Assembly (NCBI GenBank): GCA_002269645.1
Contig: NIVC01004987.1
Coordinates: 1-29,436 of the forward strand
DNA: 29,436 bases
Reading direction: 5' to 3'
Source: Macrostomum lignano
Taxonomy: Eukaryota
Shown: positions 773-27,854 of the stretch, piece by piece
Layout of the letters: each line of letters begins with the position of its first letter
Numbering within the stretch: the stretch's first letter is position 1
Position numbers and translations under genes: made by a program
The notes under the pieces: generated by a model
The model's database searches: none
Seen by the model: the letters and a program-made list of their open reading frames with translations, nothing else
Told to the model about the DNA's origin: nothing

Positions 773-1601
773 CATAAAAACCATAAAACTCATAAGATGA
801 AAGTTCATAACTATTTGTGATTTATAAAATTTTCAAATTCCATGGAAACTAATCATGTAATTTTCTATAAAAAAACTTGAACAAAAAATGATGTTAACTA
901 GTGCATTGTATTTGGTGAGTGAAGCGAGTAAAGTAGAGATGTTTATAAAGTAGACAAAAATGTGTAACACACAAAAAAGGTCATTTATTGTCGCAAAGCC
1001 TAGAAAACCTAGCATAAGTTCCTAGGACCTTGGCGTACATTTTAGTATGAAGTGGCATAGATTTTTTAGGGGACTTTTTCCTCGGCATATATTATAACAT
1101 GATCCTGACTATGGTTAGAATAGTATATAATATATTATTTACAAGATGTAGACTGCCATGTAGGCAATTAAAACATTAGGTAGATGGCTACTATATATAT
1201 AAACACAAATCATGTTTTGGCAAGGTTTTTGGTAAATTTTAGCAAAAATGTTTTTTTAACAAATCATTTCATATTGACTTTCTTTAAATGCATCATGGGC
1301 GATTTTCCTCTTTCGTTCGTTAAATTATTTTTTCGATTTGAATCGGTGCGTAGAGGCGAAAAAGTGACGTGGCAGCATTTGAAATTGTGCCTATTGAAAA
1401 AATGATGTGGCAGTAGTGGAAAGGACATGGGGTTGCTGCTGACACATGTCTATGGCACTACTCACCTACTCGGTTCGTGGCGGAGTATAGGCAGCAGCTT
1501 GCACTCGCTCCTTGCTCCCCTTCCCACTCTCGCATGAGCTTTGACTTATCGCATTGAGTCTTCACTTGTTAAATTTTATTAAATTTTACTCAAACTGCAA
1601 C

Positions 1602-1898
1602 ATGGCTGGGCGCCCAGCGGCACCTACATTCATCGTCCCTCCTGGACAACTGCGTCCCTCGCTGGAGCTGTGCGACATAAACTTTACGATGCGCGAGCTG
1701 GCCAACATCACCCAGACGCCTAGAGACTGCATCAACTGGATGGCAACCTTCCATCTTCTGGCCAACCAACAGACATGCTCAACATGCCCCGGAGCCCCGG
1801 CGATGCGTCTGCAGCAGCGCACGGGTGATCGCTTTGTGGACAGGCTTGCTTGGGCATGTACCGGCTGCCATGGCCAGGTCTCCATAAGAAAGGGCTCT
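1602..1898 (+). pseudogene. N-terminal Zn-ribbon fragment of a Merlin (IS1595/ISXO2-like) transposase, no DDE domain
   Basis: ATG at 1602. The peptide LLANQQTCSTCPGAPAMRL...DRLAWACTGCHGQVSIRKGS matches the LL-x-CxxC-M-L...D...W-CxxC...SIRKGS pattern of eukaryotic IS1595-like transposases. Similarity stops after SIRKGS. No TIR pair found. Confidence 0.65.
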
Positions 1899-4782
1899 TT
1901 GCTGGGGCTCCAGTTGAACCATATTGGACTTTGTGAGACTCTCTGTATGCCAGAGCAAGCTACGGGACGCAGTGCCCTATTGTTGTCGTTTACTGTCGTT
2001 ACATGTCGTTTACCATTACCGTTTGTCTTTAGTTAAACAACTCCATCCAACTTTCCGAGAAAAATTTAAGTCCCAGCATCCCATTACTGTCGTTTTCTGA
2101 CATTACTCAGTAGTCACAACTTGTTTCTGTCGAAAAAATAATTTAACGAATGAAAGAGGAAAATCGCCGCATCATGCATTAAACTTTACTAAATATAAAA
2201 TTTTCTTTACCTTTGCCTAAAATATTTATAAAATATAACTTAATATTTAGATAATTTAGGACATATTATTACTCTTATTAATTTTAGCAGAACTTACCTG
2301 AGTAATTTCAGAAATTGACTGCTTTAAAGTCTTTTTGTTAAGGGAACCAACCAAATTTTCTATTTGGTTTAATGCAAATTGCAGAGAGTCTAGCATTGTT
2401 GATAGTAAATGCTTTGTAGGGCTAAACAGTAATAGTTTGATGCTAGTAACATGTCAAATGACAATTTTGACAATCAAAGCACAATTTAATGTTTTAAGTA
2501 AGAATTGTCAGACTACTAGGCTAGTATAGTGTAGGACTTGCTACACCTCTAACTTTATTCAAGTTCAACTTGACAGCAAAAAAAGGGGGCTAATGTTTCT
2601 CAAAGAATGCAGAAAGTAAAGGGTATTTTTATTAGTATTCAGTCTGTATCTCTTGCTATTTTAAAAATTATATTAGTAACTAGGGCTAAGCCTATTTTCG
2701 AGTACTAGTCTACTGTATTTAGGCCTATATAAATATATTGTGATTAAAAAATTAAGACATCTTAAATATCACCTAATGAGTACTCAGAAAAAAAGATTTA
2801 TTCATTGTTCACCATTCAGGTAATCATGTCAATCATTATTCTGTTATTCTGTTATTTACTGTCAATATTGACTGGCTTTAGAAGCTTGAAAACTGTAGAT
2901 ATTAATAAATAAATATTTATAACATATTTTTTGTCTTATAAGAAATTGTGTTTTTTACTTTAAATTAAAACCGACACCAAAAACAATAAAAAACTTTGAT
3001 ATAATGCGACAATTTGAGTCACGCTTTTTTTAAATAATCGTGCTTGTCGATGACTAATGTAAAAACTATGTTACAAATATAAATATTTATCACGATTGTC
3101 TCTATAACCAAATTCTTCGAGTATGAAGTCGGCCCACACCCCAGAGTGGCTAAAACGAAATCAAAGACGAAAAATATCAACAAGATGGGCCCACTCAGTG
3201 GGCCCGGCCATAAAGTCTTGATCCAATAGAACTACGCATTTTGCTGAAAATGATTAAATGCAACGATTTTTTATGCATGCAGAATCACTGCAGATTTTTC
3301 ATGGAAGTAACAATGCAAAGCAGTGAAGCATGCAGCTATGACTGAGAGGGTCATGGTTACCATTACCGCCCTGATGTCCCTGCAGTTGTTAAGTTCCATG
3401 CAATCAGCCGCGGTGGGCGGGGGAGTGACAGCTGGAACAGCAGCTCAGGAGGTGGGCCGTTAGCCCATACACCTTTCCCTATGCTTAGATGTAACCCACT
3501 GCAGTTAATCCAAGTGCAGGGTGACAACGGCGGTATGGGTGGGAGCAGGGAGCCATGAGGATCCCGATCACTGGTCGAGCAATCTCGGCCAGGCCATTGG
3601 CCAGCTCGTGGCCTCGGAATGGCCCGACTTCCCCTGGGAGCCACCTTAAAGACACCCTGTTGGGGGCGCCCTAAGCGGTTAGCAGGCACCATGGCACACT
3701 TGCTTTTTTCTTTTACATGGATACATGTATTTTCTTACCCTCTCCAATTAACATTTCGCTAGGTGAGCCGTTTTGCTGGTTGTCCATGTCCCATCCAGGT
3801 CATGCAATCTCACCCACACTTGTTCCGTTACATATTGTCGACGTCAACCCAAGCGCGTCACGATTAGTTTAGATGAAGATGATCTGTCCATCTGAATGTA
3901 AACTACATGTACATGTAGTTCATGTGGTTCATATTATACATACTGTATATACCGTATGTTTCATAGACAAATGAAATAGAAATAGAAATAACCAAGACGT
4001 TAATTGCCATTGCAGCAAAGCGAGTACTATATGTACATATAGTCAATAGTGTGTTGTTTAAATTTCTGACAGAATAGATTTCGCTAACCTCCCATTATTA
4101 TTTGCAAAAAATACAGACAGTAAAAATAAATTACGAGTAATATCCGTACGTAAAGCTTTACCAGTTTTTTAAGTAACTCCGCGTAATTTACCGATCTTTC
4201 TTACAAATTACTCGTACATACGATCCTACATGGTAGATAAGAAACGCATAATTTTTGGCATATTGGAAATTTAAAAGTTAAATTACTAAACTCTCGATCA
4301 TTAGCTCCAATGAGTTCCGTATCATTTTGAGTTGCCGGGGTGAATGGGGATGTCATCTTAAGCGCCGGCATAATGCTTTCATCCGGCCCTTAGAAGGGCA
4401 GAAAGAGTCAAAAGCAATTCAACTGAATAGTTGAATCTATTCACAGTTTCGTGTAGCGCGCTGTAGTATCTATTTTCTACCTAAGTACACTCGTATATAA
4501 AGTCTTTCTATCTTACACGCTGGAAAGTGAAAGTACTTCTACAAACATACGTGTAAACTTATTGAAATCATAGAAAGAACTGGAGATAGTGGCCAACTAT
4601 TTAATACTCGTACATGTAGGCGTTCATTGAAATCGTATCTTGGGATCATTACTTGTTTTGTCCTTTATACATTTCTGTACATAAGGAAGAGAAATACAAG
4701 AAATGTCCGTGGCGATTTGACCGTTGTGCAGCTCAAAGTGAAAAACTGACCACCGCAAGTTTTACTCATACTCTCCGCGACG

Positions 4783-6113
4783 CTACTCCTCATCATCTCC
4801 TCCTCCAGTTTCTTCGATCATCGGCTCAGGTTCGTCACGGTCCGACTCCGCTCCGACTGATGCTTCATCAGCCGGCTCGTCGGCGTCCACTTCTTCTTCG
4901 AAGTCATCGTCATCGGGCTCATCGCTTGCAAAATCGTCATCGGCTGTATCGTCGTCGTCGGAAACCGCTAAGCTACTTTGACGAGAGGAGACTGGGGAAC
5001 GCTCATCCTGCAGTGGCTCGTCTGGTTGGTTGGTTGGTTGGTTGGTTGGTTGGTTGGTTGGTTGGTTGGTTGGTTGGTTGGTTGGTTGGTTGGTTGGTTG
5101 GTTGGTTTGTTTGTTGGTTGGTTGTTTGGTTGGTTGGTTGGTTGGTTGGTTGGTTGGTTGGTTGGTTGGTTGGTTGGTTGGTTGGTTGGTTGGTTGGTTG
5201 GTTGGTTGGTTTGTTTGTTGGTTGGTTATTTGGTTGGTTGGTTGGTTGGTTGGTTGGTTGGTTGGTTGGTTATTTGGTTGGTTGGTTGGTTGGTTGGTTG
5301 GTTGGTTGGTTGGTTGGTTGGTTGGTTGTTGGTTGGTTGGTTGGTTGGTTGGTTGGTTGGTTGGTTGGTTGGTTGGTTGGTTGGTTGGTTGGTTGGTTGG
5401 TTGGTTGGTTGGTTGGTTGTTGGTTGGTTATTTGGTTGGTTGATCCAAAAAATCAAATCAAATCTCGATAGCTAACCTCGGTTGGCATTGGCATCATCGT
5501 GGTCCGGATCGCCCATCCCATCCACACCCATGTTCTCCAGCTCCTCGCGTCGTTCTTCGCGTCTCTCTCGCTCTCGCCGACGCTCCTCCTGCAACTCCAT
5601 ATTGTCGTTCATGACTTCCAGCGCTTCGTTTTCCATTCGGTAGAGCCAAGCTTCGCGCTCACGGTCAGTCAGCCGGTGATCATCGTCCCCGTCCAGAACC
5701 TGCGCAGCTAGCTGGCCTCGAGCGAAGGCCGCTTGTCTGAAAGAAATTTGAATTTGAGTACGAGCGTATCACCTAATGCAATTATTATCAATAGTTGACC
5801 AGCGCACTATAAAAAATTGACAAGGAGGGATGTTTGCGGCATCTGCAACGCTTCCAAACCTATAACAATTTACATGAACAGAAACATACTTTTGAAACCA
5901 ACATTGACTTCATATGAGTCACTGAAAGAGGATAGGCTACCTGTCACCGTCTGCAAAGTAAGCTTGCTGAGCCTCATCAGCACCAAGCTGTCCGTTAACC
6001 TCCAGTAGGCTGTGCCGTCGCTTGCTGCTCTCCAGAAATGCCACCAACTCTTCGCGTTTCGACTCGCGTTTAGCCAATTCTCGCTGACGCATTTTGTCCA
6101 CAGTATTTCCCAT
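4783..6113 (-). CDS. Spliced gene for a 223-aa highly acidic, Asp/Glu/Arg-rich protein of unknown family (coding exons 6113-5941, 5736-5477, 5021-4783)
   Basis: Both introns are GT-AG (TTTCAG/GTAGCC; TTTCAG/GTTAGC; CCAG) and phases match (2 then 1). 173+260+239=672 nt gives 223 aa plus TAG. Start context is ACAAATGG. An acceptor at 6122 implies a 5' UTR exon (candidate GTAAGG donor at 6352). ATTAAA lies at 4605-4600. Protein: [23 protein letters not shown]...[13 protein letters not shown]...[18 protein letters not shown]...[13 protein letters not shown]...GGGDDEE. Confidence 0.8.
5024..5442. repeat. (GGTT)n/(CCAA)n microsatellite, about 105 units with TTT, TAT and TGT interruptions, filling an intron
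   Basis: Seen directly. It lies between the donor at 5476 and the acceptor at 5023-5022. Confidence 0.98.
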
Positions 6114-6879
6114 TTGTGCGGCTGAAACTTGAAGCAGTACTAACTGGGCAACAGACAGCAATTGTGAGGAAAGACCGAGGACTCCAGAAATTGCGTATCG
6201 TTTTAGCTATTTGAAAGCACCCTGACAAAGTTGAATTTTTGTTTATGTTTAATACGCAGCAGAATCGGTTGGTGGCGTGGTGTCGGTCAAGTCAGGCTTT
6301 GGTATAGCTGGATAGTTGCAATTAAACAAACTTAACAACCCCCACCCCTTACTTGCAAGCGCGTTGTCCAGGGTTCAACAGCCAACCTTGCAACACTTGG
6401 TGGTGACGAAAAATGCGAGCAAACTTTCAGCTAGTTTGAATAAATCACTGAAACTTGCATTTAGGTTAGATCTTGGGGCTTAATTCCTGTTTAAGGTAGT
6501 CCTGGTAGCTCTCTGTAGCAGCACAGCAGAAAAAGGTAAAGCAGTTTCGTTGGGATGAAAGAAAATTACTTAAACTCTTCTTGATGAAAGAGTTAAGCGG
6601 GGTGCAACTATATTTTGATAATAGCCATCTAAGATTAACCTAACTGGGGCCTACGACAATTTACGAGTACCATCAATAATTTGATTGTCATCAATTGACT
6701 GCTGAACCTACTAGCCCTATCCTATATTTGTTCTAAACCCTAACCTAAATTCTCGGCAAGTTAATTTATGCATGGCAGTCATGCAATTGTCGCGCTCCCC
6801 CATTACTATGCGGTAGGTCTGATCGATTGACTAGTGAAAGTAGCATTTAGGGCATTTCATATACATTGTTTTATTACTT

Positions 6880-6940
6880 TACCAATCGAAATGCTGATTT
6901 GTTACGTAGTTAACCAACACGGAAGTGCTGGTCACGTACT
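6880..6940. promoter_or_regulatory. Candidate bidirectional promoter core between the two divergent acidic genes (copy at ~16138-16198)
   Basis: CCAAT (6882-6886), Ets-type CGGAAGTG (6920-6927) and GTCACGTA (6931-6938) cluster within 60 nt between oppositely oriented genes. These short motifs can occur by chance. Confidence 0.3.
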
Positions 6941-7628
6941 TTCCATTTCCCGTCATTGATATCAACCCCTAACCGGAGACAATACATTGCATTGATTAAT
7001 GATCAATCATCAAACTCTTGTTTGCAGGGTGTTCGCTCACAACACATTTTTCTGCTGAAACTTCGGGTTCTTTCTGCGATGAAAGGAATTAAACAAGCGT
7101 AGTTCTCACGGTTCCATACAATTTTTTATCCTGCGACACCCGTCTGTAGAGCATTCGCCAAACAGCATATTGTCTGCCGCTTGGTCTTGTCAAATTATAT
7201 TATATTAAATAATATTAAAGCTCTCGCTGGGCAATGCAGACTCTGACCCTACAGTTTGGCATTGTGGCATTTCGCTTGGACGAAAGATACTGTAATTTGA
7301 GACAGACTGGAAATGGGCAAGGCAGATCAGAGTCTACCCCACTGCGATAAACTGGTTAATTGAAGCATCTCCCTGCCAGCTGCGCGCGTTTTTTCTTCAT
7401 CGTTTAAAACCCTTGCCTAGGTGCGCAAGGTGAATTGAAGTAAAGACCACCCCCAGAACGCCTTGCCCCGAGCCTTAGCAACCTGAGCCACCTGCGCGGG
7501 CTCTTTTTTGAAGTAATTTATGCAGAAAAGAAGAGCTAAAAAAGCAAATCAACATTTCCACTGAAAAAAAGCAGAGAGATTAACAGACCAGCAACCAGAG
7601 CGTAGAAAATCAAGATCGAAACGGCAAG

Positions 7629-8492
7629 ATGACGAGTCAAGAAGCTGAGAATCAGAATCGTGAAGACGAAGAAGCGAAAGCGATGCATCGAGAAGAAGAA
7701 AAAGCAGAGCATCAGGGAGACGAGGACGTGGAGCACCAAGGAGACGAGGATGCAGAGCATCAGGGAGACGAGGACGTGGAGCACCAAGGAGACGAGGATG
7801 CAGAGCATCAGGGAGACGAGGATGCAGAGCATCAGGGAGACGAGGATGCAGAGCATCAGGGAGACGAGGATGCAGAGCATCAGGGAGACGAGGATGCAGA
7901 GCACCAGGGAGACGAGGATGCAGAGCGCCAGGGAGACGAGGATGCACAGCACCAAGGAGACGAGGATGCAGAGCGCCAAGGAGACGAGGATGCAGAGCAT
8001 CTGGAAAAAGAGGCTTCAAAGCACCATAAAGAAGAGAATGCGGAGCGCAAGGAAGAAGACGATATGAAGCACCGGGAAGCGGAGTTTGTGAAACGCCACG
8101 AAGACAGTGATAACAGAAAGCAGCTAGAGCACAAAAAGGAGCAAGACATAAAGCTACCAACAATGAAAGTAGAGGTCCGAGAAGCTTTTCAGGATGATGA
8201 CAACTCGGAAGAGAAGAAGTGCAATGAATTTCAACAATCGGATTCAACTCCAACGTGGCAACAATCTAAGCAACTGCCTCCTTTGCGCAGCTACGTGTTG
8301 TCGAAACGAAGTGGCAAGACTGGTCGGCAAGATCAGCAGAAGCTGGCACCAAATCGGGTGATGATGGAGGCAGCTCAGCTGCTGCCAAAACTTCGACATT
8401 CTCGTCCCGGCATCGGATATTACGGACGGGTGCGCGGGCAAGCCGCGAACAGGTCTGTTGACCTGCGGTCGAGTCACGAACCGGCAGGTCAG
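7629..8492 (+). CDS. Large exon of an acidic His/Asp/Glu repeat protein (12x HQGDEDAE); this copy lacks its putative last exon
   Basis: Open frame from ATG 7629 with an in-frame 24-bp repeat. A perfect CAG|GTAAGT donor lies at 8492/8493 (phase 0). Unspliced, the frame ends at 8615 (328 aa). The true start is uncertain: acceptors at 7525 and 7586, in-frame TAA at 7581. Confidence 0.55.
7710..7997 (+). repeat. 24-bp coding minisatellite, 12 copies (second array 16967-17254)
   Basis: Units of CATCAGGGAGACGAGGATGCAGAG; 288/24=12. Confidence 0.97.
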
Positions 8493-8685
8493 GTAAGTGG
8501 CGGATGGCTTTGTGGCGATTACACATGCTCTGAAATCAGAGTAAAATTGGTAATTCAATCTAATCCTACTGCCCACAAAAGTAGCACACTATCACATCAT
8601 AGAAATCGACAATGACACTATGCAGTACACATTGTCACGTAAAAGTACGGAGTGACTCATTCCAACTATTCATATGAGCGTAGAC

Positions 8686-10115
8686 CACAGCAATCGGAGT
8701 GACACTCTCCAAAATTAACCACACTCACAACACAGCAATCGGAGTGACACTCTCCAAATGCACCACACTCGCGACACAGCAATCGGAGTGAACACTCTCC
8801 AAATGCACCACACTCACAACACAGCAATCGGAGTGAACACTCTCCAAATGCACCACACTCGCGACACAGCAATCGGAGTGACACTCTCCAAATACACCAC
8901 ACTCACGACACAGCAATGGGAGTGACACTCTCCAAATGCACCACACTCGCGACACAGCAATCGGAGTGAACACTCTCCAAATGCACCACACTCACGACAC
9001 AGCAATCGGAGTGAACACTCTCCAAATTCACCACACTCGCGACACAGCAATCGGAGTGACACTCTCCAAATACACCACACTCACGACACAGCAATCGGAG
9101 TGACACTCTCCAAATACACCACACTCACAACACAGCAATGGGAGTGACACTCTCCAAATGCACCACACTCGCGACACAGCAATCGGAGTGAACACTCTCC
9201 AAATGCACCACACTCACGACACAGCAATCGGAGTGAACACTCTCCAAATTCACCACACTCGCGACACAGCAATCGGAGTGACACTCTCCAAATACACCAC
9301 ACTCACGACACAGCAATCGGAGTGACACTCTCCAAATACACCACACTCACGACACAGCAATCGGAGTGAACACTCTCCAAATGCACCACACTCGCGACAC
9401 AGCAATCGGAGTGACACTCTCCAAATACACCACACTCACGACACAGCAATCGGAGTGACACTCTCCAAATGCACCACACTCGCGACACAGCAATCGGAGT
9501 GAACACTCTCCAAATGCACCACACTCACAACACAGCAATCGGAGTGAACACTCTCCAAATGCACCACACTCGCGACACAGCAATCGGAGTGACACTCTCC
9601 AAATACACCACACTCACAACACAGCAATGGGAGTGACACTCTCCAAATGCACCACACTCGCGACACAGCAATCGGAGTGAACACTCTCCAAATGCACCAC
9701 ACTCACGACACAGCAATCGGAGTGAACACTCTCCAAATTCACCACACTCGCGACACAGCAATCGGAGTGACACTCTCCAAATTCACCACACTCGCGACAC
9801 AGCAATCGGAGTGACACTCTCCAAATACACCACACTCACGACACAGCAATCGGAGTGACACTCTCCAAATACACCACACTCACAACACAGCAATGGGAGT
9901 GACACTCTCCAAATGCACCACACTCGCGACACAGCAATCGGAGTGAACACTCTCCAAATGCACCACACTCACGACACAGCAATCGGAGTGAACACTCTCC
10001 AAATTCACCACACTCGCGACACAGCAATCGGAGTGACACTCTCCAAATACACCACACTCACGACACAGCAATCGGAGTGACACTCTCCAAATACACCACA
10101 CTCACGACACAGCAA
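8686..10115. repeat. 44/45-bp satellite, about 32 monomers with higher-order structure
   Basis: Unit CACAGCAATCGGAGTGA(A)CACTCTCCAAAT[G/A/T]CACCACACTC[G/A]C[G/A]A. Confidence 0.97.
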
Positions 10116-10825
10116 TTGTATATAGTGCATTGTATTTGGTGAGTGAAGCGAGTAAAGTAGAGATGTTTATAAAGTAGACAAAAATGTGTAACACACAAAA
10201 AAGGTCATTTATTGTCGCAAAGCCTAGAAAACCTAGCATAAGTTCCTAGGACCTTGGCGTACATTTTAGTATGAAGTGGCATAGATTTTTTAGGGGACTT
10301 TTTCCTCGGCATATATTATAACATGATCCTGACTATGGTTAGAATAGTATATAATATATTATTTACAAGATGTAGACTGCCATGTAGGCAATTAAAACAT
10401 TAGGTAGATGGCTACTATATATATAAACACAAATCATGTTTTGGCAAGGTTTTTGGTAAATTTTAGCAAAAATGTTTTTTTAACAAATCATTTCATATTG
10501 ACTTTCTTTAAATGCATCATGGGCGATTTTCCTCTTTCGTTCGTTAAATTATTTTTTCGATTTGAATCGGTGCGTAGAGGCGAAAAAGTGACGTGGCAGC
10601 ATTTGAAATTGTGCCTATTGAAAAAATGATGTGGCAGTAGTGGAAAGGACATGGGGTTGCTGCTGACACATGTCTATGGCACTACTCACCTACTCGGTTC
10701 GTGGCGGAGTATAGGCAGCAGCTTGCACTCGCTCCTTGCTCCCCTTCCCACTCTCGCATGAGCTTTGACTTATCGCATTGAGTCTTCACTTGTTAAATTT
10801 TATTAAATTTTACTCAAACTGCAAC

Positions 10826-11122
10826 ATGGCTGGGCGCCCAGCGGCACCTACATTCATCGTCCCTCCTGGACAACTGCGTCCCTCGCTGGAGCTGTGCGAC
10901 ATAAACTTTACGATGCGCGAGCTGGCCAACATCACCCAGATGCCTAGAGACTGCATCAACTGGATGGCAACCTTCCATCTTCTGGCCAACCAACAGACAT
11001 GCTCAACATGCCCCGGAGCCCCGGCGATGCGTCTGCAGCAGCGCACGGGTGATCGCTTTGTGGACAGGCTTGCTTGGGCATGTACCGGCTGCCATGGCCA
11101 GGTCTCCATAAGAAAGGGCTCT
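10826..11122 (+). pseudogene. Second copy of the Merlin-like Zn-ribbon fragment
   Basis: Same as 1602-1898 except ACG>ATG (T>M) at 10941. Confidence 0.65.
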
Positions 11123-14005
11123 TTGCTGGGGCTCCAGTTGAACCATATTGGACTTTGTGAGACTCTCTGTATGCCAGAGCAAGCTACGGGACGCAGTGCC
11201 CTATTGTTGTCGTTTACTGTCGTTACATGTCGTTTACCATTACCGTTTGTCTTTAGTTAAACAACTCCATCCAACTTTCCGAGAAAAATTTAAGTCCCAG
11301 CATCCCATTACTGTCGTTTTCTGACATTACTCAGTAGTCACAACTTGTTTCTGTCGAAAAAATAATTTAACGAATGAAAGAGGAAAATCGCCGCATCATG
11401 CATTAAACTTTACTAAATATAAAATTTTCTTTACCTTTGCCTAAAATATTTATAAAATATAACTTAATATTTAGATAATTTAGGACATATTATTACTCTT
11501 ATTAATTTTAGCAGAACTTACCTGAGTAATTTCAGAAATTGACTGCTTTAAAGTCTTTTTGTTAAGGGAACCAACCAAATTTTCTATTTGGTTTAATGCA
11601 AATTGCAGAGAGTCTAGCATTGTTGATAGTAAATGCTTTGTAGGGCTAAACAGTAATAGTTTGATGCTAGTAACATGTCAAATGACAATTTTGACAATCA
11701 AAGCACAATTTAATGTTTTAAGTAAGAATTGTCAGACTACTAGGCTAGTATAGTGTAGGACTTGCTACACCTCTAACTTTATTCAAGTTCAACTTGACAG
11801 CAAAAAAAAGGGGGGCTAATGTTTCTCAAAGAATGCAGAAAGTAAAGGGTATTTTTATTAGTATTCAGTCTGTATCTCTTGCTATTTTAAAAATTATATT
11901 AGTAACTAGGGCTAAGCCTATTTTCGAGTACTAGTCTACTGTATTTAGGCCTATATAAATATATTGTGATTAAAAAATTAAGACATCTTAAATATCACCT
12001 AATGAGTACTCAGAAAAAAAGATTTATTCATTGTTCACCATTCAGGTAATCATGTCAATCATTATTCTGTTATTCTGTTATTTACTGTCAATATTGACTG
12101 GCTTTAGAAGCTTGAAAACTGTAGATATTAATAAATAAATATTTATAACATATTTTTTGTCTTATAAGAAATTGTGTTTTTACTTTAAATTAAAACCGAC
12201 ACCAAAAACAATAAAAAACTTTGATATAATGCGACAATTTGAGTCACGCTTTTTTTAAATAATCGTGCTTGTCGATGACTAATGTAAAAACTATGTTACA
12301 AATATAAATATTTATCACGATTGTCTCTATAACCAAATTCTTCGAGTATGAAGTCGGCCCACACCCCAGAGTGGCTAAAACGAAATCAAAGACGAAAAAT
12401 ATCAACAAGATGGGCCCACTCAGTGGGCCCGGCCATAAAGTCTTGATCCAATAGAACTACGCATTTTGCTGAAAATGATTAAATGCAACGATTTTTTATG
12501 CATGCAGAATCACTGCAGATTTTTCATGGAAGTAACAATGCAAAGCAGTGAAGCATGCAGCTATGACTGAGAGGGTCATGGTTACCATTACCGCCCTGAT
12601 GTCCCTGCAGTTGTTAAGTTCCATGCAATCAGCCGCGGTGGGGGGGAGTGACAGCTGGAACAGCAGCTCAGGAGGTGGGCCGTTAGCCCATACACCTTTC
12701 CCTATGCTTAGATGTAACCCACTGCAGTTAATCCAAGTGCAGGGTGACAACGGCGGTATGGGTGGGAGCAGGGAGCCATGAGGATCCCGATCACTGGTCG
12801 AGCAATCTCGGCCAGGCCATTGGCCAGCTCGTGGCCTCGGAATGGCCCGACTTCCCCTGGGAGCCACCTTAAAGACACCCTGTTGGGGGCGCCCTAAGCG
12901 GTTAGCAGGCACCATGGCACACTTGCTTTTTTCTTTTACATGGATACATGTATTTTCTTACCCTCTCCAATTAACATTTCGCTAGGTGAGCCGTTTTGCT
13001 GGTTGTCCATGTCCCATCCAGGTCATGCAATCTCACCCACACTTGTTCCGTTACATATTGTCGACGTCAACCCAAGCGCGTCACGATTAGTTTAGATGAA
13101 GATGATCTGTCCATCTGAATGTAAACTACATGTACATGTAGTTCATGTGGTTCATATTATACATACTGTATATACCGTATGTTTCATAGACAAATGAAAT
13201 AGAAATAGAAATAACCAAGACGTTAATTGCCATTGCAGCAAAGCGAGTACTATATGTACATATAGTCAATAGTGTGTTGTTTAAATTTCTGACAGAATAG
13301 ATTTCGCTAACCTCCCATTATTATTTGCAAAAAATACAGACAGTAAAAATAAATTACGAGTAATATCCGTACGTAAAGCTTTACCAGTTTTTTAAGTAAC
13401 TCCGCGTAATTTACCGATCTTTCTTACAAATTACTCGTACATACGATCCTACATGGTAGATAAGAAACGCATAATTTTTGGCATATTGGAAATTTAAAAG
13501 TTAAATTACTAAACTCTCGATCATTAGCTCCAATGAGTTCCGTATCATTTTGAGTTGCCGGGGTGAATGGGGATGTCATCTTAAGCGCCGGCATAATGCT
13601 TTCATCCGGCCCTTAGAAGGGCAGAAAGAGTCAAAAGCAATTCAACTGAATAGTTGAATCTATTCACAGTTTCGTGTAGCGCGCTGTAGTATCTATTTTC
13701 TACCTAAGTACACTCGTATATAAAGTCTTTCTATCTTACACGCTGGAAAGTGAAAGTACTTCTACAAACATACGTGTAAACTTATTGAAATCATAGAAAG
13801 AACTGGAGATAGTGGCCAACTATTTAATACTCGTACATGTAGGCGTTCATTGAAATCGTATCTTGGGATCATTACTTGTTTTGTCCTTTATACATTTCTG
13901 TACATAAGGAAGAGAAATACAAGAAATGTCCGTGGCGATTTGACCGTTGTGCAGCTCAAAGTGAAAAACTGACCACCGCAAGTTTTACTCATACTCTCCG
14001 CGACG

Positions 14006-15370
14006 CTACTCCTCATCATCTCCTCCTCCAGTTTCTTCGATCATCGGCTCAGGTTCGTCACGGTCCGACTCCGCTCCGACTGATGCTTCATCAGCCGGCT
14101 CGTCGGCGTCCACTTCTTCTTCGAAGTCATCGTCATCGGGCTCATCGCTTGCAAAATCGTCATCGGCTGTATCGTCGTCGTCGGAAACCGCTAAGCTACT
14201 TTGACGAGAGGAGACTGGGGAACGCTCATCCTGCAGTGGCTCGTCTGGTTGGTTGGTTGGTTGGTTGGTTGGTTGGTTGGTTGGTTGGTTGGTTGGTTGG
14301 TTGGTTGGTTGGTTGGTTGGTTGGTTGGTTGGTTGGTTGGTTGGTTGGTTTGTTTGTTGGTTGGTTGTTTGGTTGGTTGGTTGGTTGGTTGGTTGGTTGG
14401 TTGGTTGGTTGGTTGGTTGGTTGGTTGGTTGGTTGGTTGGTTGGTTGGTTGGTTTGTTTGTTGGTTGGTTATTTGGTTGGTTGGTTGGTTGGTTGGTTGG
14501 TTGGTTGGTTGGTTATTTGGTTGGTTGGTTGGTTGGTTGGTTGGTTGGTTGGTTGGTTGGTTGGTTGGTTGTTTGGTTGGTTGGTTGGTTGGTTGGTTGG
14601 TTGGTTGGTTGGTTGGTTGGTTGGTTGGTTGGTTGGTTGGTTGGTTGGTTGGTTGGTTGGTTGGTTGGTTGGTTTGTTGGTTGGTTATTTGGTTGGTTGA
14701 TCCAAAAAATCAAATCAAATCTCGATAGCTAACCTCGGTTGGCATTGGCATCATCGTGGTCCGGATCGCCCATCCCATCCACACCCATGTTCTCCAGCTC
14801 CTCGCGTCGTTCTTCGCGTCTCTCTCGCTCTCGCCGACGCTCCTCCTGCAACTCCATATTGTCGTTCATGACTTCCAGCGCTTCGTTTTCCATTCGGTAG
14901 AGCCAAGCTTCGCGCTCACGGTCAGTCAGCCGGTGATCATCGTCCCCGTCCAGAACCTGCGCAGCTAGCTGGCCTCGAGCGAAGGCCGCTTGTCTGAAAG
15001 AAATTTGAATTTGAGTACGAGCGTATCACCTAATGCAATTATTATCAATAGTTGACCAGCGCACTATAAAAAATTGACAAGGAGGGATGTTTGCGGCATC
15101 TGCAACGCTTCCAAACCTATAACAATTTACATGAACAGAAACATACTTTTGAAACCAACATTGACTTCATATGAGTCACTGAAAGAGGATAGGCTACCTG
15201 TCACCGTCTGCAAAGTAAGCTTGCTGAGCCTCATCAGCACCAAGCTGTCCGTTAACCTCCAGTAGGCTGTGCCGTCGCTTGCTGCTCTCCAGAAATGCCA
15301 CCAACTCTTCGCGTTTCGACTCGCGTTTAGCCAATTCTCGCTGACGCATTTTGTCCACAGTATTTCCCAT
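14006..15370 (-). CDS. Second intact copy of the 223-aa acidic gene (exons 15370-15198, 14993-14734, 14244-14006)
   Basis: Exons appear identical to copy 1. The microsatellite intron is 34 nt longer. Confidence 0.8.
14247..14699. repeat. (GGTT)n microsatellite, copy 2 (about 113 units)
   Basis: Seen directly. Longer than copy 1, with shifted interruptions. Confidence 0.98.
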
Positions 15371-16885
15371 TTGTGCGGCTGAAACTTGAAGCAGTACTAA
15401 CTGGGCAACAGACAGCAATTGTGAGGAAAGACCCGAGGACTCCAGAAATTGCGTATCGTTTTAGCTATTTGAAAGCACCCTGACAAAGTTGAATTTTTGT
15501 TTATGTTTAATACGCAGCAGAATCGGTTGGTGGCGTGGTGTCGGTCAAGTCAGGCTTTGGTATAGCTGGATAGTTGCAATTAAACAAACTTAACAACCCC
15601 CACCCCTTACTTGCAAGCGCGTTGTCCAGGGTTCAACAGCCAACCTTGCAACACTTGGTGGTGACGAAAAATGCGAGCAAACTTTCAGCTAGTTTGAATA
15701 AATCACTGAAACTTGCATTTAGGTTAGATCTTGGGGCTTAATTCCTGTTTAAGGTAGTCCTGGTAGCTCTCTGTAGCAGCACAGCAGAAAAAGGTAAAGC
15801 AGTTTCGTTGGGATGAAAGAAAATTACTTAAACTCTTCTTGATGAAAGAGTTAAGCGGGGTGCAACTATATTTTGATAATAGCCATCTAAGATTAACCTA
15901 ACTGGGGCCTACGACAATTTACGAGTACCATCAATAATTTGATTGTCATCAATTGACTGCTGAACCTACTAGCCCTATCCTATATTTGTTCTAAACCCTA
16001 ACCTAAATTCTCGGCAAGTTAATTTATGCATGGCAGTCATGCAATTGTCGCGCTCCCCCATTACTATGCGGTAGGTCTGATCGATTGACTAGTGAAAGTA
16101 GCATTTAGGGCATTTCATATACATTGTTTTATTACTTTACCAATCGAAATGCTGATTTGTTACGTAGTTAACCAACACGGAAGTGCTGGTCACGTACTTT
16201 CCATTTCCCGTCATTGATATCAACCCCTAACCGGAGACAATACATTGCATTGATTAATGATCAATCATCAAACTCTTGTTTGCAGGGTGTTCGCTCACAA
16301 CACATTTTTCTGCTGAAACTTCGGGTTCTTTCTGCGATGAAAGGAATTAAACAAGCGTAGTTCTCACGGTTCCATACAATTTTTTATCCTGCGACACCCG
16401 TCTGTAGAGCATTCGCCAAACAGCATATTGTCTGCCGCTTGGTCTTGTCAAATTATATTATATTAAATAATATTAAAGCTCTCGCTGGGCAATGCAGACT
16501 CTGACCCTACAGTTTGGCATTGTGGCATTTCGCTTGGACGAAAGATACTGTAATTTGAGACAGACTGGAAATGGGCAAGGCAGATCAGAGTCTACCCCAC
16601 TGCGATAAACTGGTTAATTGAAGCATCTCCCTGCCAGCTGCGCGCGTTTTTTCTTCATCGTTTAAAACCCTTGCCTAGGTGCGCAAGGTGAATTGAAGTA
16701 AAGACCACCCCCAGAACGCCTTGCCCGAGCCTTAGCAACCTGAGCCACCTGCGCGGGCTCTTTTTTGAAGTAATTTATGCAGAAAAGAAGAGCTAAAAAA
16801 GCAAATCAACATTTCCACTGAAAAAAAGCAGAGAGATTAACAGACCAGCAACCAGAGCGTAGAAAATCAAGATCGAAACGGCAAG

Positions 16886-19544
16886 ATGACGAGTCAAGAA
16901 GCTGAGAATCAGAATCGTGAAGACGAAGAAGCGAAAGCGATGCATCGAGAAGAAGAAAAAGCAGAGCATCAGGGAGACGAGGACGTGGAGCACCAAGGAG
17001 ACGAGGATGCAGAGCATCAGGGAGACGAGGACGTGGAGCACCAAGGAGACGAGGATGCAGAGCATCAGGGAGACGAGGATGCAGAGCATCAGGGAGACGA
17101 GGATGCAGAGCATCAGGGAGACGAGGATGCAGAGCATCAGGGAGACGAGGATGCAGAGCACCAGGGAGACGAGGATGCAGAGCGCCAGGGAGACGAGGAT
17201 GCACAGCACCAAGGAGACGAGGATGCAGAGCGCCAAGGAGACGAGGATGCAGAGCATCTGGAAAAAGAGGCTTCAAAGCACCATAAAGAAGAGAATGCGG
17301 AGCGCAAGGAAGAAGACGATATGAAGCACCGGGAAGCGGAGTTTGTGAAACGCCACGAAGACAGTGATAACAGAAAGCAGCTAGAGCACAAAAAGGAGCA
17401 AGACATAAAGCTACCAACAATGAAAGTAGAGGTCCGAGAAGCTTTTCAGGATGATGACAACTCGGAAGAGAAGAAGTGCAATGAATTTCAACAATCGGAT
17501 TCAACTCCAACGTGGCAACAATCTAAGCAACTGCCTCCTTTGCGCAGCTACGTGTTGTCGAAACGAAGTGGCAAGACTGGTCGGCAAGATCAGCAGAAGC
17601 TGGCACCAAATCGGGTGATGATGGAGGCAGCTCAGCTGCTGCCAAAACTTCGACATTCTCGTCCCGGCATCGGATATTACGGACGGGTGCGCGGGCAAGC
17701 CGCGAACAGGTCTGTTGACCTGCGGTCGAGTCACGAACCGGCAGGTCAGGTAAGTGGCGGATGGCTTTGTGGCGATTACACATGCTCTGAAATCAGAGTA
17801 AAATTGGTAATTCAATCTAATCCTACTGCCCACAAAAGTAGCACACTATCACATCATAGAAATCGACAATGACACTATGCAGTACACATTGTCACGTAAA
17901 AGTACGGAGTGACTCATTCCAACTATTCATATGAGCGTAGACCACAGCAATCGGAGTGACACTCTCCAAAATTAACCACACTCACAACACAGCAATCGGA
18001 GTGACACTCTCCAAATGCACCACACTCGCGACACAGCAATCGGAGTGAACACTCTCCAAATGCACCACACTCACAACACAGCAATCGGAGTGAACACTCT
18101 CCAAATGCACCACACTCGCGACACAGCAATCGGAGTGACACTCTCCAAATACACCACACTCACAACACAGCAATGGGAGTGACACTCTCCAAATGCACCA
18201 CACTCGCGACACAGCAATCGGAGTGAACACTCTCCAAATGCACCACACTCACGACACAGCAATCGGAGTGAACACTCTCCAAATTCACCACACTCGCGAC
18301 ACAGCAATCGGAGTGACACTCTCCAAATACACCACACTCACGACACAGCAATCGGAGTGACACTCTCCAAATACACCACACTCACAACACAGCAATGGGA
18401 GTGACACTCTCCAAATGCACCACACTCGCGACACAGCAATCGGAGTGAACACTCTCCAAATGCACCACACTCACGACACAGCAATCGGAGTGAACACTCT
18501 CCAAATTCACCACACTCGCGACACAGCAATCGGAGTGACACTCTCCAAATACACCACACTCACGACACAGCAATCGGAGTGACACTCTCCAAATACACCA
18601 CACTCACGACACAGCAATCGGAGTGAACACTCTCCAAATGCACCACACTCGCGACACAGCAATCGGAGTGACACTCTCCAAATACACCACACTCACGACA
18701 CAGCAATCGGAGTGACACTCTCCAAATGCACCACACTCGCGACACAGCAATCGGAGTGAACACTCTCCAAATGCACCACACTCACAACACAGCAATCGGA
18801 GTGAACACTCTCCAAATGCACCACACTCGCGACACAGCAATCGGAGTGACACTCTCCAAATACACCACACTCACAACACAGCAATGGGAGTGACACTCTC
18901 CAAATGCACCACACTCGCGACACAGCAATCGGAGTGAACACTCTCCAAATGCACCACACTCACGACACAGCAATCGGAGTGAACACTCTCCAAATTCACC
19001 ACACTCGCGACACAGCAATCGGAGTGACACTCTCCAAATTCACCACACTCGCGACACAGCAATCGGAGTGACACTCTCCAAATACACCACACTCACGACA
19101 CAGCAATCGGAGTGACACTCTCCAAATACACCACACTCACAACACAGCAATGGGAGTGACACTCTCCAAATGCACCACACTCGCGACACAGCAATCGGAG
19201 TGAACACTCTCCAAATGCACCACACTCACGACACAGCAATCGGAGTGAACACTCTCCAAATTCACCACACTCGCGACACAGCAATCGGAGTGACACTCTC
19301 CAAATACACCACACTCACGACACAGCAATCGGAGTGACACTCTCCAAATACACCACACTCACGACACAGCAATCGGAGTGAACACTCTCCAAATGCACCA
19401 CACTCGCGACACAGCAATCGGAGTGACACTCTCCAAATACACCACACTCACGACACAGCAATCGGAGTGACACTCAAAATTCAGACCAAAAACTATCATC
19501 AAGAATCGCAGTTTAGTTCTCAAAGGTCAAAATGTTCTGAATGA
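16886..19544 (+). CDS. Putative complete copy of the HQGDEDAE-repeat gene: exon 16886-17749 plus terminal exon 19485-19544 (~307 aa), with the satellite as intron
   Basis: CAG|GTAAGT donor at 17749. The first acceptor after the satellite is AAATTCAG|ACC (19484), giving TKNYHQESQFSSQRSKCSE* in phase 0. AATAAA lies at 19963. The terminal exon is inferred. Confidence 0.4.
17943..19475. repeat. 44/45-bp satellite, copy 2 (about 34-35 monomers, includes the natural right end)
   Basis: Same order of monomer variants as copy 1. Ends ...GGAGTGACACTC|AAAATTCAG. Confidence 0.97.
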
Positions 19545-20153
19545 AGTTCCGAGCGTCCCACTGACGCACCACCACCCCTCCCCTGAACCAGACGGCTCCC
19601 CTCGTCCTCGGTCCAAGTCAGGAGCTGACCAGCCAATTCTACAGCAGCAACAATAAGGTCGGTCAGCAAGTTGGAGTTAAGCGGGTAACTACAGCGGCTT
19701 CAGTGAACGGTCGCTACCCATTCAGCCGGATTATCTACCCTAATCTGATTGGCCAGAGCGTCGGACAGCCAATCAGGATGGCGCAGCGGCAGCAGCGAAG
19801 CCTCACAATGCACAGCAGCGAGGGGACATTCGTTCTGAGGCACAAGCTGCGCCAGAGCGCTGGCTGCCTAGCGCGAATCATGGACAGCTCAAGCACTGGA
19901 GAGGCGGCCGTGAGACGGGCGATCTCGCGAGCAAGTAAATACTAACCTCAGACGGTTAACGCAATAAACAGTCGTGTTGATATTGTCACATCGATATACC
20001 TCTATTGATATTAAATTATATAACCATTTTTGCGGATAAAGTCTTGCAACGCATTTTTATTTAAAACAACCTCAAATAGCAGCCAAATATGCAACTCAGA
20101 GTTTTCAGGACGCGATTTCACAACCAAAACTATCAAAAAAGCAGTACAAGAAT

Positions 20154-27000: not shown

Positions 27001-27854
27001 GAAGGGGTCGGGACCATAGACAAAGCTCCTTTGTGGAACTGTTGGGTGGAATAAACATCGGAATAGAAGGGGTCAGGACCATAGACAAAGCTGTTTTGTG
27101 GAACTGTTGGGTGGAATAAACATCGGAATAGAAGGGGTCAGGACCATAGACAAAGCTGTTTTGTGGAGCTGTTGGGTGGAATAAACATCGGAATAGAAGG
27201 GTCAGGACCATAGGCAAAGCTCCTTTGTGGAACTGTTGGGTGGAATAAACATCGGAATAGAAGGGGTCAGGACCATAGACAAAGCTCCTTTGTGGAACTG
27301 TTGGGTGGAATAAACATCGGAATAGAAGGGGTCAGGACCATAGACAAAGCTGTTTTGTGGAACTGTTGGGTGGAATAAACATCGGAATAGAAGGGGTCAG
27401 GACCATAGACAAAGCTCCTTTGTGGAACTGTTGGGTGGAATAAACATCGGAATAGAAGGGGTCAGGACCATAGACAAAGCTCCTTTGTGGAACTGTTGGG
27501 TGGAATCAGGTGGCAGTGGCTTCATAGTCAACTTGACGGACAAAAGCAATGAACCCTGCCTGATGGCCGCTGTACACCCTGAGTGAGCGTGTGCCTCCAT
27601 ACCCATCTGTGTACGTGCTCTGGGGCCAGCGGAATGGGTTCGACTGCTTGCTTCCTCGACTGCCGCCATGGTAAACATTACAGCACAAGCTTCATCCAGT
27701 TAAGAGCGAGTTCAATAGAACAAAAAAGCAATCACTGAATGAAGCCAGTCTCAAATACACTGGGAGCTACTCACACTCTATCGCCAGAGCCCTTGCCGCA
27801 GTACAGGCAGCCGATGATGAATCCAACAGAGATGAAGGACTTCGCCAGCTTCAT
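21011..27854 (-). CDS. Cys-loop (pentameric) ligand-gated chloride channel subunit, GlyR/GluCl class, 439 aa, 11 coding exons
   Basis: Exons 27854-27775, 26805-26740, 24001-23943, 23858-23791, 23710-23565, 23486-23397, 22570-22488, 22393-22194, 22122-22023, 21522-21251, 21166-21011. All GT-AG and phase-compatible; 1320 nt total. Motifs: signal peptide [20 protein letters not shown]; YLRQQW; [11 protein letters not shown]; Cys-loop [15 protein letters not shown]; second disulfide [12 protein letters not shown]; anion-filter PAR; M3 SYIKAIDVW; M4 [10 protein letters not shown]...FNVVYW. The 68-nt and 83-nt exons match GlyR/GABA-A gene architecture. The first two exons are less certain than the rest. 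Confidence 0.95.
21657..21922. repeat. Degenerate 15-bp minisatellite (GGAGTGAGGTGGGTGC-like) with a secondary ~80-bp internal duplication, intronic
   Basis: Seen directly in intron 21523-22022. Confidence 0.9.
22724..23283. repeat. 15-bp minisatellite (GAGTGAGGTGGGTGT)n, about 37 units, intronic
   Basis: Nearly perfect from ~22870 to 23283 and degenerate at the left end. Lies in intron 22571-23396. Confidence 0.98.
24085..26112. repeat. ~57-68-bp satellite with a variable poly-C tract, about 31 units, intronic
   Basis: Unit GATATCTGACTGCGAGTGACCAATGCCGCTCAGCCTTATCTCCACCCTTGCTTCTCT(C)n. A shorter variant lacks CCACCCTTG. Confidence 0.97.
26497..26689. mobile_element. Candidate MITE with ~20-bp imperfect terminal inverted repeats
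   Basis: Left end TTAGAAATTACCGTTGTATGA (26497-26517); right end TGATACAACCGTAACTCTAA (26670-26689). A third TIR-like copy, AGTTACCGTTGTATCA, lies at 28595-28610. No clear TSD. Confidence 0.4.
26967..27505. repeat. 65-bp minisatellite, about 8.3 units, intronic
   Basis: Unit TTGTGGAACTGTTGGGTGGAATAAACATCGGAATAGAAGGGGTCAGGACCATAGACAAAGCT(CCT/GTT); period 65 measured at 27031, 27096 and 27161. Confidence 0.97.

What the first reader, a model, noticed from the sequence alone, without database searches (positions are those of the whole stretch)
4783..6121. Hidden three-exon gene for an acidic protein with an MG N-terminus, missed by the ORF track
Seen: phase-compatible splicing gives 223 aa. It has a charged helical N-half, a conserved-looking core ([24 protein letters not shown]), an E/R-rich single-alpha-helix-like stretch ([18 protein letters not shown]) and a ~80-aa Asp/Glu tail. 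The start is MGNTVD, so Gly2 myristoylation is possible, although residue 6 is not the preferred Ser/Thr. I do not recognise the family. Inference: a lineage-restricted, possibly membrane-anchored polyanion (Ca2+ or histone binding).
Basis: partly seen in the sequence, partly recalled or inferred. Interest (0 to 1): 0.7.

Follow-up and report, generated by a model that had tools for sequence, protein, structure and literature searches.

The report
Annotated flatworm orphan gene, acidic protein
The three-exon gene is real, but GenBank already lists it as a hypothetical protein of the flatworm Macrostomum lignano; it belongs to a small family seen only in this species, encodes a helical protein with a very acidic tail, and probably lacks the proposed lipid anchor.

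Summary
On the minus strand, exons 6113-5941, 5736-5477 and 5021-4783 are joined by GT-AG introns in phases 2 and 1 and give the quoted 223-aa protein.

The window is the whole M. lignano contig NIVC01004987.1. The same coding sequence is already in GenBank as hypothetical protein BOX15_Mlig029469 (PAA46218, PAA46219, PAA65634). That annotation was built from RNA-seq transcripts. A nucleotide-identical second copy lies at 15370-14006, inside a 9.2-kb tandem duplication.

Pfam, PDB sequence and Foldseek searches found no family. Three searches of 5.8 billion protein clusters and one search of 1.84 billion representatives found a single relative. It is the M. lignano paralogue Mlig027284 (210 aa, starts MGNC, no acidic tail), which has the same three-exon layout and intron phases.

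In the two conserved helical blocks, synonymous sites are saturated (pS 0.79) while pN is 0.26. The frame is therefore coding and constrained.

Myristoylation is doubtful. Residue 6 is Asp here and Gln in the paralogue, outside the [ACGST] set the transferase needs.

The tail (residues 129-223, net charge -37) is specific to this paralogue. Its binding role is inferred, not tested.

Verdict: an ordinary, already annotated orphan gene of unknown function, of low interest.

The parts
5941..6113 (-). Exon 1 (coding part): ATG at 6113 in the context CACAAATGG, codons 1-57 plus 2 nt. Encodes MGN and conserved helix A.
5737..5940 (-). Intron 1, 204 nt, GT..AG, phase 2.
5477..5736 (-). Exon 2: variable linker, conserved core helix B ([16 protein letters not shown]...) and the Glu/Arg-rich run.
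5022..5476 (-). Intron 2, 455 nt, GT..AG, phase 1. Almost entirely a (CCAA)n microsatellite at 5023-5442. It is 489 nt in the second copy.
4783..5021 (-). Exon 3 (coding part, TAG at 4785-4783): the conserved SRxxS[L/F]AV motif (aa 157-164), then the acidic extension (aa 165-223) that only this paralogue has, with DDDF and DDDDF.
6122..6127 (-). TTTCAG 3' splice acceptor 8 nt upstream of the ATG. It fits the M. lignano spliced-leader acceptor motif [T/C]TNCAG. It is a candidate trans-splice site or 5'UTR intron acceptor and has not been verified.
   Evidence: PMC8629364
4600..4605 (-). ATTAAA, a candidate poly(A) signal 178 nt after the stop codon. Other candidates are AGTAAA at 4766 and TATAAA at 4669. 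None is verified.
14006..15370 (-). Second copy of the gene: exons 15370-15198, 14993-14734 and 14244-14006. The coding sequence is 100% identical at the nucleotide level.
899..19373 (.). Two units of a 9.2-kb tandem duplication (899-10116 and 10123-19373, 99.5% identical). Each unit carries one copy of the gene.

Best explanation
This is gene Mlig029469 of the flatworm Macrostomum lignano. It is a genuine spliced protein-coding gene, already annotated, and present as two identical tandem copies in the window.

It encodes a 25-kDa protein with pI about 4.1 and no signal peptide or membrane span. Together with one paralogue, Mlig027284, it forms a family seen only in this species.

Shown here:
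- The exon structure.
- The identity to the deposited coding sequence.
- Two conserved helices (about residues 3-39 and 79-126) and a conserved SRxxS[L/F]AV motif, all shared with the paralogue.
- Purifying selection on the conserved helical blocks.

Inferred:
- The conserved helices form an amphipathic protein-protein interaction module, either a helical hairpin or a short coiled coil. The hydrophobic positions L89, M92, A96, V99 and L106 follow a 3-4 spacing.
- The R-x-x-S-hydrophobic motif is a site for a basophilic kinase.
- The Asp/Glu tail, which only this paralogue has, is a disordered polyanionic arm. It carries CK2-type sites and two acid-flanked Phe residues 10 apart. It would bind basic partners or cations, in the way the acidic tails of histone chaperones do.
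- The protein is more likely soluble than myristoyl-anchored, because residue 6 violates the transferase motif.
For: Gene structure:
- The splice model and its translation were verified.
- The product is 100% identical at 100% coverage to hypothetical protein BOX15_Mlig029469g1/g2.
- The deposited gene range equals 6113..4783, and the second copy is 15370..14006.
- The Mlig_3_7 gene models were built from RNA-seq transcript assemblies plus TransDecoder (PMC5730564). The junctions therefore have transcript support.

Paralogue:
- The only relative in the exhaustive search has E 3.3e-05. It is 43% identical in the full alignment.
- It has three exons with the same intron phases, 2 and 1.
- In the conserved blocks, 47 of 75 codons encode the same residue, and 29 of those 47 use a different codon. 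pS is 0.79 and pN is 0.26.

Structure and composition:
- AlphaFold2 gives confident helices exactly over the conserved blocks and a disordered tail.
- Charge profile, CK2-type sites, and DDDF/DDDDF with F175 and F185.
- No hydrophobic segment; the highest Kyte-Doolittle 19-residue average is -0.05.

Literature:
- The transferase motif and the residue-6 mutagenesis are in PMC9018777.
- Two aromatic anchors 9-14 residues apart within acidic tracts bind H2A-H2B in APLF and YL1 (PMC6101569).
Against: - No functional or expression data were found for this gene. Supplements of five M. lignano papers do not list it.
- The helical packing is not predicted with confidence (pTM 0.26-0.29).
- The acid-flanked Phe pattern carries little information and is expected in many acidic tracts.
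- MGN and Lys7 are conserved between paralogues that are otherwise only 43% identical, and the paralogue has Cys4. This looks like an acylation signal and argues for some N-terminal lipid modification despite residue 6.
- RNA-seq reads were not examined directly.
Confidence: 0.55

Rival explanations
1. Gly2 is N-myristoylated, and in the paralogue Cys4 is also palmitoylated. The protein is then a membrane-tethered polyanion that concentrates calcium or basic proteins at a membrane, in the manner of BASP1 or MARCKS-type lipidated acidic disordered proteins.
For: - M1-G2-N3 and K7 are invariant between the two paralogues, and Asn3 is kept through a synonymous change, AAT versus AAC.
- Residues 3, 5 and 7 fit the transferase motif.
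- The paralogue starts MGNC. An MGNC heptapeptide that kept the rest of the G-alpha-o N-terminal sequence went to the plasma membrane (PMC9018777).
- The region just after the N-terminus is basic (residues 1-39, net +3, pI 10), as in myristoyl-electrostatic switches.
Against: - Residue 6 is Asp (Gln in the paralogue), outside [ACGST].
- Changing Ser6 of G-alpha-o to Arg, Asn, Phe or Val gave cytosolic, nuclear protein.
- An acidic residue next to the lipid and a net charge of -45 would repel acidic membranes.
- If the mRNAs are trans-spliced at the acceptors found, the spliced leader's own AUG precedes the gene's AUG. It is in frame (MMGNC) in the paralogue.
Confidence: 0.25
2. The 223-aa product is only the C-terminal part of a larger protein that begins in the upstream Cys-loop ion-channel gene, as in the older UniProt model A0A1I8HVW9 (748 aa).
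For: - That model sits in the same 90%-identity cluster and ends with the complete 223-aa sequence.
- Its channel exons map to window 23793-21014 on the same strand.
- The frame stays open for 16 codons upstream of the ATG.
Against: - The fusion has to read the 24-nt tandem repeat at 7704-8063 as LCILVSL repeats. That reading is antisense to the annotated plus-strand ORF.
- The transcript-based Mlig_3_7 annotation calls the 223-aa gene on its own, three times.
- The ATG has A at -3 and G at +4, with a splice acceptor 8 nt upstream.
- The paralogue is a stand-alone protein with the same MGN start and a different neighbour.
Confidence: 0.03
3. It is a spurious ORF on a non-coding or repeat-derived transcript, kept open by a GA-rich composition.
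For: Exon 3 is low-complexity (GAC/GAT/GAA/GAG). The three genomic copies are too alike to show any constraint.
Against: - The paralogue comparison shows strong protein-level conservation with saturated synonymous sites.
- The exon number and intron phases are shared.
- The other two frames of exon 3 are closed.
Confidence: 0.02

Closest known systems
Macrostomum lignano hypothetical protein BOX15_Mlig027284 (PAA56595, PAA72198; UniProt A0A267E4U9), 210 aa
   Same: It is the only detectable homologue. It shares the MGN start and Lys7, helix A (RELAKR...R-ELV-F), core helix B (RLTDR-REA-LY-MEN...RRER-RREER), the SRxxS[L/F]AV motif, and three exons with intron phases 2 and 1.
   Different: It has no acidic tail and ends 8 residues after the SRxxS motif. 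It has a longer Gly/Ala/Ser-rich linker and Cys at position 4. It sits at a different locus, next to an amino-acid permease gene.
Acidic histone-binding tails with aromatic anchors (APLF acidic domain, YL1, Spt16, NAP1 C-terminal acidic domain)
   Same: A disordered Asp/Glu tract carries two aromatic residues flanked by acidic residues. F175 and F185 are 10 apart, compared with 9 in APLF and 14 in YL1 (PMC6101569).
   Different: There is no sequence or fold homology to any of them. The anchors here are Phe only. Nuclear localisation and binding are untested. The resemblance is a low-information pattern.
Lipidated acidic disordered proteins such as BASP1/NAP-22 and MARCKS (named from general knowledge, not tested here)
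   Same: An MG start, a basic N-terminal stretch, then an acidic, largely unfolded protein with pI near 4.
   Different: Those proteins have a canonical small residue at position 6. This protein has Asp6 and fails the motif. It also has two conserved helices that those proteins lack. No homology was found.
Glu/Arg/Lys-rich single alpha-helices (ER/K motifs)
   Same: Residues 108-125 ([18 protein letters not shown]) are predicted helical with the highest confidence in the model.
   Different: The run is only about 18 residues, continues an amphipathic helix and is partly conserved as RRER-RREER in the paralogue. It is too short to call a stand-alone single alpha-helix domain.

Membership tests
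N-myristoyltransferase substrates | Gly at position 2 after the initiator Met | tested here: met
   MGNTVDK. The paralogue is MGNCIQK.
N-myristoyltransferase substrates | Residue 3 not D/E/F/R/W/Y, residue 5 not D/E/K/R, residue 7 K/R (motif of Castrec et al. as quoted in PMC9018777) | tested here: met
   N3, V5 and K7 here; N3, I5 and K7 in the paralogue.
N-myristoyltransferase substrates | Residue 6 is one of A/C/G/S/T | tested here: not met
   Asp6 here and Gln6 in the paralogue. Ser6 to Arg, Asn, Phe or Val abolished membrane binding of the G-alpha-o heptapeptide.
N-myristoyltransferase substrates | Myristate demonstrably attached to Gly2 | not testable with these tools
   This needs metabolic labelling or an in vitro transferase assay.
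Mlig029469/Mlig027284 family (unnamed, M. lignano only) | Significant sequence similarity over helix A, helix B and the SRxxS motif | tested here: met
   E 3.3e-05 in a library of 1.84 billion proteins; alignment.
Mlig029469/Mlig027284 family (unnamed, M. lignano only) | Shared gene structure | tested here: met
   Three exons with intron phases 2 and 1 in both genes. The intron positions lie within a few codons of each other in poorly aligned linkers.
Histone H2A-H2B chaperone acidic domains (cap-anchor / double-anchor type) | Acidic disordered tract with two acid-flanked aromatic anchors about 9-14 residues apart | tested here: met
   DDDF(175) and DDDDF(185). This is a pattern only; the spacing is compared with PMC6101569.
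Histone H2A-H2B chaperone acidic domains (cap-anchor / double-anchor type) | Homology to a known chaperone domain | tested here: not met
   No Pfam hit, no PDB sequence hit and no Foldseek hit.
Histone H2A-H2B chaperone acidic domains (cap-anchor / double-anchor type) | Binds histones and prevents non-specific histone-DNA aggregates; nuclear localisation | not testable with these tools
   This needs binding and localisation experiments.
Pfam FAM27 (PF15832) | Score above the gathering threshold of 30.8 bits | tested here: not met
   10.8 bits, E 0.7.
Cys-loop ligand-gated ion channel (as the C-terminal part of UniProt A0A1I8HVW9) | Neur_chan_LBD or Neur_chan_memb domain within the product | tested here: not met
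   The domains lie in residues 20-297 of the fused model, encoded at 23793-21014. The 223-aa product has none.
ER/K single alpha-helix | Long (30 residues or more) uninterrupted Glu/Arg/Lys helix without a hydrophobic seam | tested here: inconclusive
   Only about 18 residues (108-125), predicted helical.

The most novel reading that the evidence does not exclude
The two paralogues may be the founding members of a Macrostomum-specific family of N-terminally acylated helical adaptors. These would be modified despite a non-canonical residue 6 (Asp or Gln). One member would have gained a polyanionic tail with a histone-chaperone-like double aromatic anchor, tethering basic proteins or calcium at a membrane.
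Probability: 0.1. Interest if true: 0.4.

Novelty: already known. Interest (0 to 1): 0.15.

Why it matters
It matters little beyond the organism.

For people who work on M. lignano, it is one more taxonomically restricted gene without a function. Three details may be useful:
- It is a two-member family with clearly constrained helices.
- It has an N-terminus that looks like an acylation signal but breaks the rule at residue 6.
- Its acidic tail was gained by only one paralogue.

M. lignano can be made transgenic, so localisation and G2A tests are feasible.

Tried and rejected
Family and fold searches that found nothing:
- Pfam scans of the protein, the paralogue and the neighbouring ORFs gave no significant hit. 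The FAM27 hit at E 0.7 was rejected.
- The PDB sequence search found nothing with the protein or with the profile. The only hit, methylmalonate-semialdehyde dehydrogenase at E 0.4, is chance.
- Foldseek of the AlphaFold2 model against the PDB had a best E of 4.8, which is meaningless.

Homologue searches:
- Three word-seeded searches (full protein, two-sequence profile, trimmed profile without low-complexity parts) found only the protein itself and the paralogue.
- The exhaustive phmmer search with residues 1-109 gave one further hit, P0003 (E 5.5e-09). It is a 587-aa repeat protein that matches only a 29-residue stretch nine times, and was rejected as a repeat artefact.

Other checks:
- A second AlphaFold2 run using the paralogue alignment did not improve the packing.
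- Exon versus intron divergence among the three genomic copies cannot be judged. All differences lie in the microsatellite intron or the flanks, and the copies are about 99.9% identical elsewhere.
- The sequence after the paralogue's stop codon shows no remnant of an acidic tail in any frame.
- A full-text search for the gene identifier gave 0 papers.
- The supplements of PMC5816591, PMC7336406, PMC12896417, PMC5946080 and PMC10468722 contain neither gene identifier. PMC8629364 has no supplements held.
- The bacterial, archaeal, viral and metagenome collections were not scanned, because they cannot hold flatworm orthologues.

Full report
**What is there**

Read on the minus strand, the region holds an ATG at 6113 in the context CACAAATGG. 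Three coding segments follow, joined by canonical GT-AG introns:
- Exon 1, 6113-5941 (173 nt), with donor CAG|GTAGCC.
- Exon 2, 5736-5477 (260 nt), with acceptor TTTCAG|AC and donor GAG|GTTAGC.
- Exon 3, 5021-4783 (239 nt including TAG), with acceptor ACCAG|AC.

The intron phases are 2 and 1.

Intron 2 is almost wholly a (CCAA)n microsatellite at 5023-5442. A bacterial-style ORF list shows only 74-aa and 54-aa pieces of the gene. That is why an ORF track 'missed' it.

**Where it comes from and whether it is known**

The spliced protein is 100% identical over 100% of its length to 'hypothetical protein BOX15_Mlig029469g1/g2 [Macrostomum lignano]' (PAA46218.1, PAA46219.1, PAA65634.1).

The window is the whole 29,436-nt contig NIVC01004987.1 of assembly GCA_002269645.1.

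The Mlig_3_7 gene set was made from RNA-seq-guided transcript assemblies. These were cut at experimentally mapped trans-splice and poly(A) sites, and ORFs were called by TransDecoder (PMC5730564). The existence of this model therefore implies transcript support for both junctions. I could not look at the reads myself.

**Copies**

The window contains a 9.2-kb tandem duplication, 899-10116 versus 10123-19373, at 99.5% identity. The second unit carries a second copy of the gene with exons 15370-15198, 14993-14734 and 14244-14006. Its coding sequence is identical at the nucleotide level, and only the microsatellite intron differs in length, 489 versus 455 nt.

The same two-copy arrangement is present on the 256-kb contig NIVC01001632.1. 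That contig is collinear with the window at 99.7% identity, which is higher than the cross-copy identity (99.39-99.43%). The duplication therefore appears to predate the split between the two contigs and is unlikely to be an artefact confined to one of them.

The three genomic copies differ only in the microsatellite and the flanks. They say nothing about selection.

**Relatives**

No known family matched:
- Pfam gave nothing significant; the best hit was FAM27 at 10.8 bits against a cut-off of 30.8.
- PDB sequences gave nothing.
- Foldseek of the model gave nothing better than E 4.8.

Three searches of the 5.8-billion-cluster collection found only the protein itself and one paralogue. An exhaustive phmmer search of 1.84 billion representatives with residues 1-109 found the same paralogue, Mlig027284 of M. 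lignano (210 aa, E 3.3e-05). It also gave a repeat-protein artefact (P0003), which I rejected.

The alignment shows three conserved blocks:
- M1-G2-N3, K7 and helix A (R-RELAKR...R-ELV-F).
- Core helix B (RLTDR-REA-LY-MEN...E-Q-E-RRER-RREER-LE-GV-G).
- A short motif, S-P-x-x-S-R-x-x-S-[L/F]-A-V.

The paralogue ends 8 residues after that motif. The 59-residue acidic extension at residues 165-223 is therefore specific to the gene in the window. No remnant of it lies after the paralogue's stop codon.

The paralogue gene also has three exons with intron phases 2 and 1.

**Is it really coding?**

In the two helical blocks (75 aligned codons), 47 codons encode the same residue, and 29 of those 47 use a different codon. 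The proportion of synonymous differences is 0.79, which is saturated. The proportion of non-synonymous differences is 0.26.

That is a clear sign of long-term purifying selection on this reading frame. It rules out a chance ORF. The other two frames of exon 3 are closed.

**Protein anatomy**

AlphaFold2, run with and without the paralogue, gives confident helices at about residues 3-39 and 82-126. These are exactly the conserved blocks. The 40-78 linker has low confidence and the region from 129 onwards is disordered. The pTM of 0.26-0.29 means no reliable tertiary packing.

| Feature | Value |
|---|---|
| Whole protein | net charge -45, pI 4.1, 25.4 kDa |
| Residues 1-39 | net +3 |
| Tail 129-223 | net -37 |
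| Highest 19-residue Kyte-Doolittle average | -0.05 (no hydrophobic segment) |

With no hydrophobic segment there is no signal peptide and no membrane span. The tail has CK2-type sites (S165, T170, S204). Its only two aromatic residues, F175 and F185, each follow three or four Asp residues and lie 10 apart.

**The lipid-anchor idea**

The published recognition motif of N-myristoyltransferases is M-G-[^DEFRWY]-X-[^DEKR]-[ACGST]-[KR]. [quoted passage not shown] Replacing it by Arg, Asn, Phe or Val gave cytosolic and nuclear protein (PMC9018777).

MGNTVDK and the paralogue's MGNCIQK meet the motif at positions 2, 3, 5 and 7 but fail at position 6 (Asp and Gln). The defining feature was tested and not met, so I do not file the protein as a myristoylated protein.

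Against dismissing the idea outright, MGN and K7 are conserved between proteins that are otherwise 43% identical. The paralogue's Cys4 also looks like a second acylation site. I give membrane anchoring about 0.25.

**Transcript 5' end**

A TTTCAG acceptor ends 8 nt before the ATG, at 6122. The paralogue has TTGCAG directly before its ATG. Both fit the spliced-leader acceptor motif [T/C]TNCAG reported for M. lignano, whose leader ends in ...TTGCATG (PMC8629364).

If the mRNAs are trans-spliced there, the leader's AUG would open a 70-codon out-of-frame ORF on this gene. On the paralogue it would give an in-frame Met-Met start. This is unverified, but it bears on whether Gly is really residue 2.

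**Most likely mechanism**

The following is inference. The function shared by the family must lie in the two helices and the R-x-x-S-hydrophobic motif, because the paralogue has no acidic tail.

Helix B has hydrophobic residues in a 3-4 rhythm (L89, M92, A96, V99, L106), followed by a Glu/Arg run. Helix A has one hydrophobic patch (LVAFL). This suits a helical hairpin or a short coiled coil used for protein-protein contacts, possibly switched by phosphorylation of the conserved serine.

The tail added in this paralogue would act as a flexible polyanionic arm. Two acid-flanked aromatic residues 9-14 apart are how APLF and YL1 clamp H2A-H2B (PMC6101569). F175 and F185 fit that spacing. The pattern carries little information, and nothing here tests binding or nuclear localisation.

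My confidence that the gene is real and already annotated is about 0.95. My confidence in the soluble polyanionic-adaptor mechanism is about 0.25-0.3.

**Rivals**

- (b) The 748-aa UniProt model A0A1I8HVW9, which fuses the upstream Cys-loop channel to this protein. The channel exons map to 23793-21014 and carry the Neur_chan_LBD and Neur_chan_memb domains. The fusion has to translate a 24-nt tandem repeat antisense to another annotated gene. The transcript-based annotation and the stand-alone paralogue both contradict it. I rate it 0.03.
- (c) A spurious ORF. The selection test rejects this.

**Novelty and interest**

The gene model has been public since 2017 as a hypothetical protein, so the 'hidden gene' is already known. 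The protein has no characterised relatives. It is one of many taxonomically restricted M. lignano genes.

I found no expression or phenotype data. Nothing about it would surprise a specialist, and the interest is low.

No step had to be referred.

Noticed in passing
window 899-10116 and 10123-19373: A 9.2-kb tandem duplication at 99.5% identity. Each unit ends in a 44-nt satellite (8686-10116 and 17943-19475). The same structure occurs on contig NIVC01001632.1 (L002), collinear at 99.7%.
   Followed up: partly
window 7629-8615 (+), second copy 16886-17872 (+): A 328-aa ORF for another very acidic protein with about 15 AEHQGDED repeats (24-nt tandem repeat at 7704-8063). It lies head-to-head with the finding, 1.5 kb away. 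It is annotated as the start of a 373-aa gene spanning 7629-19945, so its intron would cross the whole second duplication unit. No Pfam match.
   Followed up: partly
window 21014-23793 (-): Exons of a Cys-loop ligand-gated ion-channel gene (Neur_chan_LBD and Neur_chan_memb). It is not in the Mlig_3_7 gene list for this stretch. In the older UniProt entry A0A1I8HVW9 it is fused to the finding's protein, which is probably a chimeric model. A 15-nt repeat array (22724-23291) sits in one of its introns.
   Followed up: partly
window 6122-6127 (-); L003 just upstream of 6001: Spliced-leader-type acceptors lie right before the start codons of both paralogues (TTTCAG 8 nt upstream here; TTGCAG adjacent in the paralogue). 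The M. lignano leader ends in ATG. That would give a 70-codon out-of-frame upstream ORF here and an in-frame Met-Met start in the paralogue.
   Followed up: partly
window 1554-2036 (+) and 10778-11260 (+): A 160-aa ORF with CxxC...CxxC zinc-ribbon-like spacing and a sub-threshold DnaJ_CXXCXGXG hit (E 3e-4). It may be a remnant of a transposase-type zinc finger.
   Followed up: no
L002 13742-21355 (corresponds to window about 11650 downwards, minus strand): On the 256-kb contig a gene model for a 2582-aa product starts between the two copies of the finding and runs over the downstream copy, which is not called separately there. In the part of the window retrieved (4006-25370), no such gene is called. 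This is probably an effect of mapping transcripts to near-identical duplicates.
   Followed up: no
window 24111-26113 and 26967-27506: Two further satellite arrays: a 67-nt unit in about 31 copies (C-rich on the plus strand) and a 65-nt unit in about 8 copies.
   Followed up: no
window 6177 (copy 1) versus copy 2 and L002: A single-base G deletion in the 5' flank of copy 1 relative to the other two copies. It may be a homopolymer error of the long-read assembly.
   Followed up: no
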